From assembly GCA_977016875.1 (NCBI GenBank), contig CDRNST010000436.1:1612001-1676000 (forward strand): DNA of 64,000 bases, written 5' to 3'. Within the stretch, counting starts at the first letter, position 1; the number at the start of each line of letters is the position of its first letter. Shown here piece after piece: positions 1 to 21,200 of this stretch. The stretch is from Pavona decussata. Lineage: Eukaryota. A program made the position numbers and the translations under genes. The notes under the pieces are model-generated. The model did not search any database, was not told where the DNA came from, and saw nothing but the letters and a program-made list of their open reading frames with translations.

Positions 1-1964
1 TTGGTGTCCGCCTCTCTTCGATAGGTATCAATCTGACGCTGTGCCTCAGCGAGCTGCCCTTTGAGGCGGTCAATCTCATCATTAAGTTTATTGACAACAT
101 CAGCATGCGATTTAGCATCTTCTTCAAGCACTGCTTTCTTACTCAATGCATCACGAAGCTCAGCGTCTGCGCGCGCGAGATTCTGTCTCAGGTTCATAAC
201 CTGCTCTTCAAAATCCCTCTTTTCTTTGTCGGCGGCATCCAGAGCAGTTTCCAGGTCAGAGTTATTCTTCTGTGCGTCTATCAAATCTCGCTCAGCGTTG
301 TCCTTGTCTTCCTGAACCTGCTTAAGGTCTTCTTCCAGCTCCGCCAGTTTCTTGTTTCCATCCATCAGCTCGTCGTTCAGTTCATTCTTTTCATCTTCAA
401 GCATGTTGTTCTGAAGGTTCAGTTGTTGCACATCCTGTTCTTTCTCGTGAATATCTCCCTCAAGGCGCCGGATTGTATCTCTCAAGTCATCGATGATCTT
501 CTGTTTCCTTGCATTGTCGTTCTTCAACTTCTCGAGGTTGCGTTGTGCTTCTGCCAATTGTGTCTGCATTGCAGCGATCTCTTTTTTAAGCTGAGCAGTC
601 TTGTCCTTTTCAGCATCCAAATCTGCCCTCAGCTGAGCCTTCGCTTTGTTGGCTGCAACGAGCTGTGCTTCTAAATTCGAGTTCTTCGCTCTTAAAGCGT
701 CAATCTCTCGCTCGAGTCCATCACGTGAATTTTCACTCCTTTCCAGAGCAAGCCGCAGCTCCGAGATTTTCTTCTCCAGTGGCGCGATTCGTAACTTGAG
801 GTCGTCTCTCTCTTTGGAAGTGATGGAGTTGCGTGATTCCAGCTCGTTGACCTTGCTCTGGTGGCCTCCTACCCTGGATCGTAGTCCGTCAACCTCACTC
901 AAGTTAGAATCATGAGAGGATTGAAGCTGTACGTACTTGGTGTTGACGCTCTCGAACTCGCTCTCCAAATCATGTATACGCGTACGGCAACGCACCAATT
1001 CATTCTCCAGTTCTCTCACACGGCTGGTCATCTTACTATTCTGGCTCTCAATCGTAGCAATTCTGCTGTTTGAAATTGCAAGCTCACGTTGGAGATCTTC
1101 TTTGGTGCTTCTAAGACTGTCGATCTGGGCCTCCTGTTCAGCTTTTCGCTTTTCCGAGGAGCGGAGCTCGTTCTCGAGGTCTTTGACCTGTTTCGCCTCC
1201 ACCTCTACACGCATCGCACTCTGAGACAGGTCCTGCTGAAGCTGCTCAACTTGATCTTCTAGTGCGCCGTTCTTCTGCTCCAGGTTGCGGATCTGTCTGT
1301 TCTTTCCCTCCGCCTCATCTCGGAGTCTGTCAGCCACACGCTTGTTGTTCACAGCTTCAGCCTGTGCACCTTGCAATGCCTCTTTGCTCTTCTTCAAATC
1401 ATCTCGTAGCCTCTCCAGCTGCCTTTTAAGATCCTCACGCTGTTTCTGAGAATTCTGCAGCTGCACCTCAAACTTCTTAACCTTGAGATCGCACTCCTTC
1501 TTCGTGGCGTCCAGGTCTCGTACCGCTCGATCGTAATCGGCCTGCATCCGGGCCAGCTTTGCTTGCAGATTGTGAATTTCCTCTTGTAGCCCTTCCTTTT
1601 CGTCGGCGGAGCTCTTCAGCGTGGCTTCATACTCCGAGATCTGCGAGCTGAAGAATTCCTCCTCCATAGGAGCAGACTCCTGAACAGTTGTAACCGACTG
1701 ACTCACGACCATCTCGGACTTGAGGGTCTCCAGCTCCCGCTGTAGTGCCACCTTGTCAGCCTTGAGTGACAGGATGATGTTGTTCTTGGAGGACAGCTCA
1801 CGTTGAAGCGCTTCAAACTCTGTCTCGCGCATCAGAAGACGCTTTTTTATGGAGACAAGCTCTTCATTAAGCCTGTTCCTGTCGCTCCTGCTCTCCTGAA
1901 GCTGTTCCTCTGTCTGTCGTTTCTGGCGCTTTAAGTTCTCGATTTCCAGTCTAAGCTGTTGGAC
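1..1964 (-). CDS. Gene A, large coding exon (3' partial, runs off window): long coiled-coil protein, paralogue of gene B
   Basis: Minus-strand acceptor cttcgttttctttaag|GTC at 1965/1964. Reading frame VQQLRLEIENLKRQKRQTEEQL...IDRLKGQLAEAQRQIDTYRREADT, E/K/L/Q/R heptad-rich; both ends translated in the same frame. Presumably absent from the ORF track because it has no stop in the window. Colinear with the gene B exon. Confidence 0.9.
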
Positions 1965-2555
1965 CTTAAAGAAAACGAAGAAATAATGATAGTGAACTTG
2001 ATCAGGCTTAATTGACAAAACATCTAGGATTAGAAACCCTTTTTCCAGCACAGTGAGACAGTAATAACCTTCCAGATTATTCAAGCTAAATTGCTAACGT
2101 GTAGAGGATTTAGCACGTATATTGACGCTGTGGTCGACGGATAGACACACAGAGGTTGCGCTTCCTCCGCGGAAAAGTAGATCTGGTAGCTAATGACAGA
2201 CAGCCCGACTTTTCGTGACGTTGACTCAAATCCAGTCCCTACGAATCAGTCCATACGTTCCGCTTAATCTGGCGCTAATCTTGGTCTGGCATGGGCACCA
2301 GTTGATTGCATTTTGACTCCGCACAAAATTCCAACGCGCAATTACAGATTTCTGGTGGGCGCACGCCTTTTCGTGAGAAAAGCAATTACGCCGAGCCCTT
2401 AAAGGAAATGCATTTGAAGTACCTTTTCAGATGGCGTTTTGAGTGCTTGAAATTTTACCTGCTTTACCGATATTAAAGACAAGCTTGGAAGGGGAACGGG
2501 TGGTGGGATAACTAGGCTATATAGGTATACATTTGGACGTATACCTCCACGCTAG

Positions 2556-17869: not shown

Positions 17870-18210
17870 AAAGAGAGCGAAGTCCCAGCCTGAGTTCCGG
17901 TCTAACCTGCTCAGTTCGCCAGGAGGTTGGAAAGAGATGGACAGATAGTGGTTTTCATCCTTTCCTGGCTTCGTCTGATCTCGCTTCTCAAATCAATTGT
18001 AAAGACCATTTAAACACCGTCACTCTAAGTTTATATCTATCCCCTACTGTAAATTTAAAGGGACGCGCATCACGATATTGAAGAAAATAACGTGGTATAC
18101 ATACTTTTCTGTGGACCACCCCATTGAGATTCAGGCGGTGTTCCAGAATCCTATTTTATTTTACCAACCTGTTCGACCCATGTGTACTATCCAAGTTTTA
18201 CTATTTTCAG

Positions 18211-21200
18211 ACGGAGCGATGGAAAACCAAGCTGGACAATCTAACTCGACAAAACCAGCAGCTCCAAGAACAGCTTTTCGACTTCAAATCGAAGTTCAAC
18301 AAACAACAAGACGAACTCTCTTCCACCCAGCGCCGGCTTCGCGAACGAGATTGGGAGGTGGAGTCTCTCCGCCGTGAGCTCAATACCAAGACCAGCACCA
18401 TGGATAAGATAAGAACCGAGAAGATGGTGATCGAGAAGGAACTCGTGATGTTGCGGGATCAGATGAACAGTCAAGTGTCCCAGGTACAGGTTCTGGAGTC
18501 CTCACCCGACGACATGGAGATGTCGTTCCTGCAGGAGACGGTCTCTCAGCTGGAAATTGATTGCAAGAATGCGGTGGACGAGCGAGATATGCTGCAGAGT
18601 GAGCTATCAACGTTACAGGCTAAGCTTGCCCAACTTCAGAATGATTGCGATAGATACCGCAGGCAATCCGAGATGGCGGGGAAGACAGGCAGCTTGACCA
18701 TTAGTCGGTATGAGGTGCAGGTACAGAACGTGGTGAAGCAGAGGGAATCTTTCAAACAACAACTTGATGACCTTCGAGAGGAGTTAAAGAAGGCTAGAGA
18801 TACGATTTCCCGATTGCAACGCGATGTCTTGCAGAATCAGAATGATGCTAACAAGTACAAAGAGGAGTCCATCTTTAAAACACACAGAATAGAAACTCTT
18901 CAAAACCAAAATACAACTCTTGAGGAGAGTTTGGAGAAAGTTAAATCTGAGTTTTCAAAGTGTCAAACAACGGTGGATGTACAAAAGCGGCAAATTGTGA
19001 CGCTGCAAGAAACGATTACGCTTCATGAGAAGACCATCCGAGAATACGAAGTAACGGTGAAGACACTGCATGAAGAAAAGGAAACAGTCGAAAGGGAGCT
19101 AGTTTTGGTGAATGGAAAATTCTCTAACCTCCAAGCATCCCAGGGCAAGCTTCAAGAGCGCGTGAAGGAGTGGGAATCGGTGGAGGTGCAATTGCGGAAG
19201 AGGGTAGGCGAGCTAGAGACGGAGTTGGAAGTACAGAAAGAAAGAGGCCCAGACCAAGTTGATGGACAGCTGGTCAGTAGAGTGGAAGATCTCCAGTCTA
19301 GGTTAGATGAGTCTGTAATGTCAGTGACAGACCTTCAAGCAAGATATGACATTGTCATCAGAGAACGTGATGAGCTTAGAAGGGTTATGGAGAACCTGAA
19401 CTCTAAGATGGTAACCACAACCGATTCGCTGAGACGTGTGCAAGAGGAAAAAGCGGAATTAGAACGCGCTGCTACTACAGACCGTAATAGAATATCAAGA
19501 CTAGAGGTTCAGTTGGAAAGTGCTACTAAAGCGAGAGACGGGTACAAATCAGAGCTTGATTCGGAGAAGAGCAAAGTGTCCCAAATGAAGAAGGAGTTGA
19601 TGGTGATACAACAGGAGTTGTCTGAAAGCCGGAGAGCGGTAGAACGGCTCAACGGAGATCTAGAGAAAAGAGACAAAAGCATTGCAGAGCTGAAGTCTAA
19701 AGTGTTATCCCTGGAGACAAAGGTTGATGATTACCGAGAGGAGGCTGAAAAAATGGAACGAAGAATTCACCTGCTTGAGAGTGAGGCCGAAGAACTTCGT
19801 TCTGAACTGATGGAGCTCCAAAAGAGGTTGGGCGACTCTGAGGCCAACTATAAGATCACAGCTGAGGAAAGAGACAGGATTAACGAGGAGCTTCAAACGG
19901 TGTATAAGGACATGTCAAACTTGCAGTCCAATTACAACATCGTGGAACAGCAAAGGAACGACTTAGAACATCAACTATCATTATTAACGAACAAGATCAA
20001 GAAACTGGACGATGAGGTCAGCAAGGCGAAGAGGGAAAGTTCTGTTTTGAATATTGAGGTGCAAGAGCTTCGGTCGACTAAAGCTAGGATGGCAGAGGAG
20101 ATTGAATCTCTAAAGAACAAGCTTGCTGATCTGAGGAAGCTAGCTGAAGCCTACAAGAAAGAGATTGCTGAAAGAGATAACACAATTGAGCGGCTCAGAG
20201 GTGAACTGACTGCTGTAACATCAGATAAGGACAATGCACTTGCGGAAATTAGTCGCTTAAGAACTGAGAACGACATTCTTCACGAAGAAAACAACAAGTT
20301 GCAAAAAGAACTGGATGCAAGCAGGGAAGAGATGATGCGATTGTCATCCTTGTATGACACTGCAACTCAAAGCAAAGAGCTTCTTCAGACCGATTTTGAA
20401 GTTGTCCAGACGAGAGTGTCCGATCTCGAATCCACATACATGGATTTCGAAGAACGTGATAAAGACGCTGGGGTTCTGTTAGAGGAAGAGCGGGAGAAAA
20501 ATGCGGATCTCGAAAAGAAAGTGCGTGACCTTAGCGACAAAGTGAAATCGTTGGAAAGCCAGCTTGATGATAGACAAAGAGAAGTTGACAAGTTAGAGAA
20601 CGACATGGATGTGGCTGAAGAAAAGATGCTTACACTAAACATCGAGATTGAAAAAATTAATGAAGAGAAGAGCAAGGAGTATCAAAAGCTCCTGGCGGCG
20701 GAAAGCAAGCTTAAAGAAGTGGAGAGAGACCTTGATGCCGCTAAAGATGACAAGGAGTCGGCGGAAAAAGAACTGTACACCCTTCAAAATAAGGTTTCTA
20801 AACAAGAAACGCAACTTGAAACCTGCCGGAGACAGATAGCGCAACTTCGAGAACAACTGGATGCTGCCAACAAGAAGATTTTCGATAGTCAAGAACGCTT
20901 TATTCAAATCGAAAGCAAATCAGCGCAGCACGAGAAGTTTGGCGAGACACTGAATACCATCATAGGAAAGAAGGACAAAACGATAGATGAGTTGAACAAC
21001 AAAATTAGACAGCTTCAGGATGAGCTTGACAAAACCAAACGACAGTTAAACAAGAACACAGCCACCTATGATGTACTGAAGACTGAAAAAGAGGAGCTGT
21101 TAAAAAGGATTACGGTCTTGCAAGGGAGACTCGATGACACTGACCAGGAAATTAGAGCCCTTAAACAGAATCGCCAGGATCTTTTACGTGATGTTAGTTC

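What the first reader, a model, noticed from the sequence alone, without database searches (positions are those of the whole stretch)
1..20200. Genes A and B are head-to-head paralogues with conserved intron position and rod length
The first exons end in a gapless 38-aa match (DITIQHISEAKGYLNEFEQMYRKHRAEIDSLKRDHASE / DLALRHYDEAKDTFTALEAAYKRLLLQVEASKEERRFE) and share RTxTYK. The big exons align from residue 1: LQAKLARMQADYDR/LQAKLAQLQNDCDR and FEVQLQNSQKQRE/YEVQVQNVVKQRE. IDRLKGQL and IESLKNKL both begin 630 codons into the exon, so the net indel is zero despite low identity. The ATGs are 5.0 kb apart and divergent. Inference: length conservation plus a shared bidirectional control region suggests in-register heterodimers, as with head-to-head collagen IV gene pairs.
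Basis: partly seen in the sequence, partly recalled or inferred. Interest (0 to 1): 0.7.

Follow-up and report, generated by a model that had tools for sequence, protein, structure and literature searches.

The report
Divergent coral giant coiled-coil gene pair
Two ancient sister genes for very long, uncharacterised coral rod proteins are transcribed in opposite directions from one small promoter that a second coral species also has, but the sequences suggest each protein pairs with itself rather than with its neighbour.

Summary
Genes A (- strand) and B (+ strand) are true paralogues. Their giant exons align colinearly over about 2,200 residues at 32% identity, with a net length difference of 9 residues. 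The alignment scores at least 59 SD above heptad-preserving shuffles. RNA contigs from four runs show that each short first coding exon splices directly, in phase 0, onto its giant exon at the homologous codon.

In one run, B has a non-coding leader exon whose donor lies about 335-375 bp from A's 5' end. Most of the "5 kb spacer" is B's leader intron. A second coral assembly keeps the head-to-head layout, with ATGs 4.7 kb apart. It conserves little of the spacer beyond this roughly 375-bp block and B's leader donor.

The pair is not special in the ways claimed. The genome holds at least seven paralogues of this family; the only named relatives are anthozoan (stony corals, a sea anemone). Two more paralogues (D, E) share the intron 1 position, and all share the near-constant rod length. 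Paralogue E, which is unpaired, is as close to A and to B as they are to each other.

The tests run here did not support in-register A/B heterodimers:
- Heptad breaks differ between A and B.
- Only 4 of the core Asn residues (31 in A, 14 in B) coincide.
- g-e' ion pairs favour AA and BB slightly over AB.
- B is about 930 residues longer than A.

Function is unknown. My best guess is that each protein forms parallel homodimeric rods that build filaments.

The parts
1..1964 (-). Gene A giant coiled-coil exon (exon 2), first 654 codons. The exon continues left of the window to about G000:C436:1607380 (2,195 codons in all). A third coding exon follows in the ORF at window -6790..-5084.
   Evidence: Open frame and acceptor AG. 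The RNA contig continuation from exon 1 matches its first codons. It is colinear with B.
1965..5625 (-). Gene A intron 1 (GT..AG, phase 0).
   Evidence: Splice-site bases. Loose ends at 5624 in four runs run straight into the giant exon.
5626..6012 (-). Gene A exon 1. The CDS is 5865..5626 (80 codons; head with RTVTYK and the conserved 38-aa end). The 5' UTR reaches 5970-6012. An optional 91-nt 5'-UTR intron (5892-5982) is seen in run X6.
   Evidence: RNA contigs cover 5624-5980 (X1), -5970 (X5) and -6012 (X6). Joint 5891>5983 has CT..AC on the + strand. The orthologue in the second species is 81% identical.
5975..6357 (.). Conserved compact bidirectional promoter block, which includes B's leader exon. 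It is by far the largest conserved part of the A-B spacer in a second species (two short blocks aside). It contains ATTTGCAT (6073-6080), TATATTT (6163-6169) and a GGGGGTCATGACAT block (near 6242-6255).
   Evidence: blastn window 5623-6357 against L036 943-1670 gives 70.7% identity. Conservation stops about 10 nt after the leader-exon donor.
6317..6346 (+). 3' end of gene B's non-coding leader exon (donor AAG|GTACGT). Its 5' end is undetermined but lies between 5983 and 6317.
   Evidence: In X6, a 10.7-kb contig joins 6346 to 10804 (GT..AG). A second contig joins the same donor to 8661. The donor is conserved in the second species.
6347..10803 (+). Gene B leader intron. It holds an alternative small exon starting at 8661.
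   Evidence: Joint and loose end in X6. Sequence at both splice sites.
10804..11157 (+). Gene B first coding exon. ATG at 10882, 92 codons; head with RTETYK and the conserved 38-aa end.
   Evidence: RNA contigs in 4 runs. The loose end at 11157 continues into the first codons of the giant exon. The orthologue in the second species is 80% identical.
11158..18210 (+). Gene B intron 1 (GT..AG, phase 0), homologous in position to A's intron 1.
18211..29211 (+). Gene B giant exon (3,666 codons plus stop). Residues 1-2205 match A exon 2. Residues 2204-2621 match A exon 3. After that come B-specific repeats and a Ser/Thr-rich tail.
48148..61169 (+). Gene C, a third paralogue in tandem with B. Candidate exons are 48148-48504 and 52372-52932, plus a giant ORF at 53598-61169. 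The splice sites were not checked.
   Evidence: B 414-2716 aligns with C 13-2337 at 441 bits. Orthologues in other corals are 62-76% identical.

Best explanation
A and B are ancient paralogues in a family of giant, almost uninterrupted coiled-coil proteins. The family has at least 7 genes in this stony-coral genome, and four of them (A, B, C, D) lie in one cluster. All named relatives are anthozoan.

Shown:
- The two genes are transcribed divergently from one compact promoter block of about 375 bp.
- A's 5' end and B's non-coding leader exon abut or overlap within that block.
- The 5 kb between the ATGs is mainly B's leader intron.
- A second coral species keeps the block and the head-to-head layout.

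Inferred:
- Each protein forms a parallel, in-register, two-stranded homodimer rod of roughly 330-390 nm.
- Short Ser/Thr-rich heads and tails and a 14-residue charge period let the rods pack side by side into filaments.
- The shared promoter would then serve to make two different rod homodimers in the same cells, possibly for one mixed filament. It would not serve to make A/B heterodimers.
- The near-constant rod length is a property of the whole family and not a signature of this pair.

The confidence given (0.6) is for the whole statement, homodimers included. For the shown part alone (paralogy, splicing, conserved divergent promoter) I would put it near 0.9.
For: Paralogy and colinearity.

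Splicing of both first exons onto the giant exons in 4 RNA runs, and B's leader exon joined 6346>10804 and 6346>8661.

Conserved head-to-head layout (ATGs 4,734 bp apart), conserved promoter block and conserved leader donor in ERZ25067546.

Family context:
- At least 7 paralogues.
- Named relatives are only Desmophyllum, Actinostola and Oculina.
- Below about 25 hits, the profile search returns only generic coiled coils.
- Exon 1 motif and phase-0 donor are also present in D and E.

Parallel dimer profile:
- 74% of a/d positions are hydrophobic.
- Position 'a' is L/I/V/N/K and position 'd' is L/A.
- Unbroken heptad runs reach 752 residues (A), 739 (B) and 1,229 (E).

In-register g-e' ion pairs exceed staggered controls for AA (z = 3.7) and BB (z = 3.5).

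Homodimer over heterodimer:
- 96% of aligned residues share a heptad position, but rigid A:B pairing is only 37-39% in phase.
- Core Asn coincide at 4 positions, out of 31 in A and 14 in B.
- Net ion pairs are 0.20 for AA and BB against 0.15 for AB.

14-residue charge periodicity with 28/n harmonics.
Against: - No protein-level data exist, and the function and the cell type are unknown.
- The heptad registers come from my own simple Viterbi scorer, not a calibrated predictor.
- About half of the A/B offset changes fall at shared Pro-containing linkers. Loops could absorb them there, so segmental heterodimers are not excluded.
- AB g-e' pairing is still above the staggered null (z = 2.3-2.9).
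- B's leader exon is seen in only one of four runs (two contigs, 25-28 nt on the leader-exon side of the joints).
- Contigs give neither strand nor true transcription start sites.
- The second species shows only A's exon 1; its contig ends before A's giant exon.
- A+B sisterhood is only moderately supported (UFBoot 81 / SH-aLRT 92). The alternative is not rejected (AU p = 0.11).
Confidence: 0.6

Rival explanations
1. One reading: A and B form obligate in-register parallel heterodimers. Co-regulation through the shared promoter secures stoichiometry, as with head-to-head collagen IV pairs.
For: - Divergent transcription from one conserved compact promoter.
- Colinear rods with a net 9-residue difference over 2,200 residues.
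- e and g positions are better conserved (37-39%) than b, c and f (23-28%). AB g-e' pairing is above the staggered null.
- Both mRNAs are present in all four runs.
Against: - Discontinuities are not shared. A has its own break at 785. B has its own breaks at 352, 1091 and 1256. At most about 50% of the central 1,440-residue segment can be in phase.
- 37 buried Asn would lie opposite a non-Asn residue.
- There is no electrostatic penalty on the homodimers.
- Length and intron conservation are family-wide, and unpaired E is equally similar to A and to B.
- No other paralogue has a head-to-head partner.
- B is about 930 residues longer than A.
- A's contigs are 5-21 times deeper than B's (weak evidence).
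Confidence: 0.12
2. The head-to-head layout is a leftover of an ancient inverted tandem duplication. It persists only because the shared promoter cannot be split. The proteins have no functional link and may work in different structures.
For: - The duplication is old. The A-B tree path of 1.56 is about 4 times the divergence between orthologues of different corals.
- Contig depths are very unequal.
- The C-terminal regions differ.
- The family is otherwise arranged in tandem, tail to tail, or dispersed.
Against: Both mRNAs occur together in every run tested. The promoter block and B's leader donor are selectively conserved, whereas most of the rest of the spacer is not. Neither point excludes this reading.
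Confidence: 0.25
3. The similarity is only generic coiled-coil composition, and A and B are not specifically related.
For: Pfam reports only a mix of unrelated coiled-coil families (CENP-F_leu_zip, ATG16, Tropomyosin and others). The atlas search gives generic golgin, TPR and plectin look-alikes.
Against: - z of at least 59 against heptad-preserving shuffles.
- 958 bits in register against 121 bits out of register.
- 96% of aligned residues fall in the same heptad position.
- The non-coiled head motif and the splice site are homologous.
Confidence: 0.01

Closest known systems
Head-to-head collagen IV gene pairs (COL4A1/A2, A3/A4, A5/A6) with bidirectional promoters
   Same: Two paralogous genes for long rod-shaped structural proteins are transcribed divergently from one short shared promoter. 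The arrangement is conserved between species.
   Different: - In collagen IV every family member sits in such a pair, and the products co-assemble in one triple helix (my own knowledge).
- Here only one of at least 7 paralogues is paired.
- The fold is a two-stranded alpha-helical coiled coil.
- The sequence tests favour homodimers.
Myosin II rod / paramyosin type filament-forming coiled coils
   Same: - Very long parallel two-stranded coiled coil with few discontinuities.
- Rod length is conserved among paralogues.
- Charge periodicity falls on 28/n harmonics (14.0, 9.3, 7.0, 5.6).
   Different: - No motor domain and no Myosin_tail Pfam hit.
- The dominant charge period is 14 rather than 28/3.
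- The rods are about twice as long.
- Short Ser/Thr-rich heads and tails are present.
Intermediate-filament proteins, including the obligate type I / type II keratin heterodimers
   Same: Head-rod-tail layout. Multigene family in clusters. A length-conserved rod.
   Different: - The Pfam Filament match is below threshold (34.4 against 40).
- The rod is about 2,200-2,700 residues, not about 310.
- In keratin partners the rod segments have equal lengths (my own knowledge). Here A and B differ at several helical sites.
Generic giant coiled-coil proteins (CENP-F, golgins such as GCC2, TPR, plectin-like)
   Same: Pfam CENP-F_leu_zip scores above its cut-off (67.5 and 63.3 bits). The nearest protein-language-model neighbours are golgin and TPR fragments.
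   Different: - Only a 100-residue coiled-coil stretch matches.
- ATG16 and Tropomyosin also pass their cut-offs on the same protein, so these matches reflect composition.
- No defining terminal domain of any of these families was found.
- A full HMMER search gives only about 25 family-level hits, and the named ones are all anthozoan.

Membership tests
Collagen-IV-like head-to-head heteromer gene pair | Paralogous genes in divergent orientation | tested here: met
   Conserved in a second species.
Collagen-IV-like head-to-head heteromer gene pair | Short shared bidirectional promoter between the two transcription starts | tested here: met
   A's 5' end lies at 5970-6012. B's leader exon ends at 6346 (one run for B). 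A 375-bp conserved block spans the two. Exact start sites are not known because contigs cannot show them.
Collagen-IV-like head-to-head heteromer gene pair | The two products co-assemble in one helix or rod | tested here: inconclusive
   Sequence proxies lean against it: phase match of 37-39%, 4 coinciding core Asn out of 31 in A and 14 in B, and g-e' net of 0.15 for AB against 0.20 for AA and BB. A protein experiment is needed.
Collagen-IV-like head-to-head heteromer gene pair | The pairing is the rule for the family's other members | tested here: not met
   No family ORF of 150 aa or more lies within about 9-17 kb upstream of D, E, F or G. C/D are tail to tail.
Intermediate filament proteins (Pfam PF00038) | Filament rod domain above Pfam's gathering score | tested here: not met
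   34.4 bits (A) and 33.2 bits (B) against a cut-off of 40.
CENP-F / mitosin | CENP-F-specific terminal domains in addition to the leucine-zipper repeat | tested here: not met
   Only PF10473 matches, on about 100 residues, alongside several unrelated coiled-coil families.
Myosin II heavy chain / paramyosin | Myosin tail domain (and motor domain for myosin) | tested here: not met
   No Myosin_tail or motor hit in any piece. Only a partial charge periodicity on 28/n harmonics.
Anthozoan giant coiled-coil family (unnamed; hypothetical proteins OS493_028716, QZH41_006553, ACROYT_G027409) | Colinear alignment over more than 2,000 residues with other members, far above the coiled-coil background | tested here: met
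Anthozoan giant coiled-coil family (unnamed; hypothetical proteins OS493_028716, QZH41_006553, ACROYT_G027409) | Short head exon ending in the conserved 38-aa motif, followed by a phase-0 intron | tested here: met
   Found in A, B, D and E. Not found for C, F or G at this sensitivity.

The most novel reading that the evidence does not exclude
Hexacorals carry a private cytoskeletal system built from 330-390-nm coiled-coil rods of conserved length. In this reading, A and B are two co-regulated subunits made from one conserved bidirectional promoter. They co-assemble as homodimers, or as dimers that are heterotypic only in segments, into one mixed filament. The system would play an intermediate-filament-like role.
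Probability: 0.15. Interest if true: 0.75.

Novelty: new member of a known kind. Interest (0 to 1): 0.45.

Why it matters
The family is uncharacterised. Its only database names are 'hypothetical protein'. It is abundant in coral transcriptome assemblies and expanded to at least seven genes. It holds some of the longest unbroken heptad runs I could measure, up to 1,229 residues in paralogue E. A conserved compact bidirectional promoter that drives two 30%-identical rod genes gives a concrete handle on how corals co-express structural paralogues. For the specific claim, the useful result is negative. Length and intron conservation are family traits, and the sequence-level specificity features (heptad breaks, core Asn, e/g charges) favour self-pairing. 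The collagen IV analogy therefore holds for gene layout but not, on present evidence, for the protein complex.

Tried and rejected
- Pfam gave only composition-driven coiled-coil matches.
- The protein atlas gave generic golgin and TPR neighbours below its recognition level.
- One literature search (coiled-coil / Anthozoa / bidirectional promoter) found nothing relevant.
- Word-based protein searches with B and A returned no full-length A or B orthologue. They returned only D-, F- and C-type orthologues. Short fragments (P0010, P0012, P0013) sit on contigs too small for synteny.
- Walking upstream from the C orthologue in ERZ25067872 reached a second, closer C-type gene rather than B. One look-up failed because I gave the wrong coordinates for a minus-strand gene.
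- In Oculina patagonica, the 10 kb upstream of the C-type gene holds no family member.
- The B orthologue in ERZ25067889 sits at a contig end.
- One AU-test script did not return. It was repeated for a single topology only.
- I built no joined (spliced) protein model and searched with none. All searches were exon by exon, by reference.
- The N runs in gene C (47573-48026 and 52091-52299) were left untouched.
- I rejected the idea that the 5-kb spacer as a whole is the control region. Only about 375 bp of it, plus two short blocks, is conserved.

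
Full report
**What is there**

The window is G000:C436:1612001-1676000 of a 602-Mb eukaryotic assembly. Its left third holds two divergent genes.

Gene A lies on the - strand.
- The ATG is at 5865.
- The first coding exon has 80 codons and ends at 5626.
- The giant exon starts at 1964 and leaves the window.
- With 30 kb fetched from the same contig, this exon is 2,195 codons long.
- One more coding exon follows, with about 555 codons, a stop, and a short non-helical tail.

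Gene B lies on the + strand.
- The ATG is at 10882.
- The first coding exon has 92 codons and ends at 11157.
- A single giant exon of 3,666 codons spans 18211-29208.

The predicted proteins are therefore about 2,830 aa (A) and 3,758 aa (B). I did not build or search any joined model. Everything was done exon by exon, by reference.

**Check of the observation**

- The ATGs are 5,017 bp apart.
- Both first exons end on the aligned Glu, followed by GT. Both giant exons follow an AG. Both introns are phase 0.
- RNA-type contigs from four runs cover only the exons. These runs hold about 140 Mb each, from four studies and at most three samples, yet carry up to 88% of the words of an 8-kb exon of a 602-Mb genome. 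At 5624 and at 11157 the contigs continue with the first codons of the respective giant exon. Both splices are therefore direct, with no hidden exon between.
- The 38-residue gapless match at the exon ends has 9 identities and a BLOSUM62 score of 51. None of 5,000 shuffles that keep position modulo 7 reach it. The best of all gapless 38-mers from four rods (over 11,000 positions) scores 41.

For the giant exons:
- A 1-2196 aligns with B 1-2205 at 32% identity and 958 bits. The best out-of-register alignment scores 121 bits.
- The Smith-Waterman score is 3,249. Three heptad-preserving shuffles give 579 (mod-7 residue shuffle), 715 (7-residue blocks) and 1,025 (28-residue blocks), so z = 59-110.
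- A global alignment has 11 indel events.
- A's third exon aligns with B 2204-2621. A's second intron is therefore simply absent from B, and also from E and D.

**The family**

A search of the genome itself finds at least seven members.
- A, B and C lie in the window.
- D lies just to the right of the window, tail to tail with C.
- E is 1.77 Mb away on the same contig, and F 1.5 Mb away.
- G is on another contig.

An exhaustive HMMER profile search of 1.84 billion proteins gives about 25 family-level hits. After these it returns only generic coiled coils from Ginkgo, Giardia and bacteria. The only names attached to family hits are hypothetical proteins of Desmophyllum pertusum, Actinostola sp. 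and Oculina patagonica. On present data, then, this is an uncharacterised family seen only in anthozoans (stony corals and a sea anemone). Earlier notes of this scan also call the genome a stony coral.

Pfam gives only composition-type matches. CENP-F_leu_zip, ATG16 and Tropomyosin all pass their cut-offs on the same protein, while Filament stays below its own.

**What is and is not special to the pair**

- The first-exon motif and the phase-0 GT donor at the same codon are also present upstream of D and E. The intron is a family trait.
- Colinearity with almost constant length holds for every paralogue pair. The differences are 21 residues in about 2,200 for A-E, 24 in about 2,800 for B-E and 6 in about 2,280 for E-C.
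- E is as similar to A (32.3%, 993 bits) and to B (32.0%, 1,249 bits) as A is to B.
- In trees, A and B come out as sisters with moderate support: SH-aLRT 94 in the quick tree, and UFBoot 81 / SH-aLRT 92 in the careful tree, which carries a long-branch warning. An AU test does not reject placing B with the E/D clade (p = 0.11).
- The A-B path (1.56) is about four times the distance between orthologues of different corals (about 0.39). The duplication is therefore old.
- No other member has a head-to-head partner within the 9-17 kb I inspected.

**The control region**

- In run X6, a 10.7-kb contig joins 6346 to 10804 across a GT..AG intron. A second contig joins the same donor to an alternative exon at 8661. 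B therefore has a non-coding leader exon that ends at 6346 (AAG|GTACGT).
- A's contigs end at 5970-6012. One form removes a 91-nt intron in the 5' UTR (5892-5982).
- The two transcription units thus start within about 375 bp of each other, or overlap. Most of the '5 kb' is B's leader intron.
- In a second species (ENA ERZ25067546; B orthologue 75-78% identical), orthologues of A's exon 1 (81% identity) and B's exon 1 (80%) lie head to head. Their ATGs are 4,734 bp apart, and the donors sit at the same codons.
- A DNA comparison of the two spacers finds one substantial conserved non-coding block, window 5980-6357. It runs on from A's exon 1 and stops about 10 nt after B's leader donor. Two short blocks follow, at 6477-6514 and 10348-10414.

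Limits of this evidence:
- B's leader exon is seen in one run only.
- Contigs show neither strand nor true ends.
- The second species' contig ends before A's giant exon.

**Homodimer or heterodimer**

A simple heptad Viterbi scorer gives these results.
- 74% of a/d positions are hydrophobic, against 17% elsewhere.
- Unbroken heptad runs reach 752 residues (A), 739 (B) and 1,229 (E).
- The core profile is that of parallel two-stranded coiled coils: position 'a' is Leu/Ile/Val with 6-10% Asn and 7-8% Lys, and position 'd' is about 47% Leu. This reading rests on general coiled-coil knowledge.
- 96% of aligned A/B residues sit in the same heptad position. This independently supports both the alignment and the registers.

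The discontinuities, however, are not shared. A has its own break at 785. B has its own breaks at 352, 1091 (stutter-like) and 1256 (skip-like). Other offset changes fall at shared Pro-containing linkers near 99, 1540, 1640 and 1940-1960. With rigid in-register pairing, only 37-39% of the rod is in phase at the best offset. Even if pairing resets at the shared linkers, my arithmetic gives about 50% for the central 1,440 residues.

Asn at 'a' occurs 31 times in A and 14 times in B, and coincides only 4 times. A heterodimer would therefore bury 37 Asn opposite a non-Asn residue, whereas homodimers pair them all.

Net g-e' ion pairs per site are 0.196 (AA), 0.197-0.200 (BB) and 0.147/0.151 (AB). 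AA and BB exceed staggered-by-7n controls (z = 3.7 and 3.5), and AB exceeds them less (z = 2.3-2.9).

None of this excludes heterotypic contacts. Nothing favours them either, and three features favour self-pairing.

In all four runs both mRNAs are present. A's contigs are 5-21 times deeper than B's, even though the runs were picked for holding B. The tool warns that contig depth is a poor measure of expression, so I give this little weight.

**Higher-order assembly (inference)**

Basic and net charge show a 14.0-residue period, with further peaks at 9.3, 7.0, 5.6 and 4.66 residues, which are 28/n harmonics. The signal is strongest in E (power 38), and present in D (17-19) and A (14). Such periodic charge zones, together with the length-conserved rods and the small Ser/Thr-rich ends, fit side-by-side staggered packing into filaments. 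This is not shown.

**Verdict**

The shared bidirectional promoter is supported and conserved. The heterodimer inference is not supported. I file the finding as a new, uncharacterised example of a known kind of arrangement, namely divergently transcribed paralogues. The genes belong to a giant coiled-coil family, so far seen only in anthozoans, whose function remains open.

Noticed in passing
window 48148-61169 (+), and G000:C436:1678062-1687742 (-), just right of the window: Genes C and D are two more paralogues, so A, B, C and D form one cluster. The C/D tail-to-tail layout is conserved in Oculina patagonica and in ERZ25067872. The latter has two tandem C-type genes.
   Followed up: partly
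paralogue E, G000:C436:3381601-3390927 (-): E has a single ORF of 3,109 aa with an unbroken heptad run of 1,229 residues. It also shows the strongest 14-residue basic-charge periodicity in the family (power 38).
   Followed up: partly
window 8661-8724, 8386-8416 and 10075-10296: Small RNA contigs lie inside B's leader intron. One of them (8661) is spliced to B's leader-exon donor, so it is an alternative 5' exon. The others are unexplained.
   Followed up: no
window 5892-5982 (-): Run X6 shows an optional 91-nt GT..AG intron in A's 5' UTR. Some A transcripts therefore start upstream of 5983, inside the block that also holds B's leader exon, so the 5' ends may overlap in antisense.
   Followed up: partly
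left of the window, about window -4620 (A exon 2/3 junction): A's second intron (phase 0) falls at a point where B, E and D are continuous. This is an intron gain in A, or parallel loss in the others.
   Followed up: partly
window 2530-2883 and 2935-3250 (A intron 1): Two copies of a repeat of about 320-350 bp, 74% identical, lie next to each other inside A's first intron.
   Followed up: no
window 6073-6080, 6163-6169 and about 6242-6255: Inside the conserved promoter block there is an exact octamer-like ATTTGCAT, a TATATTT and a GGGGGTCATGACAT stretch. All are identical in the second species.
   Followed up: no
heads and tails of A and B (window 5776-5793 region; B tail near 28600-29200): Thr/Val-rich, strand-like motifs recur in the heads (RTVTYK, RTETYK) and in the tails (TTVTTRTVKV in A, STVTTKITR in B). 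This hints at head-tail contacts.
   Followed up: no
window -18069 to -9552 (-), left of gene A: ORFs with EF-hand-like calcium-binding loops lie next to the cluster. They were not analysed.
   Followed up: no
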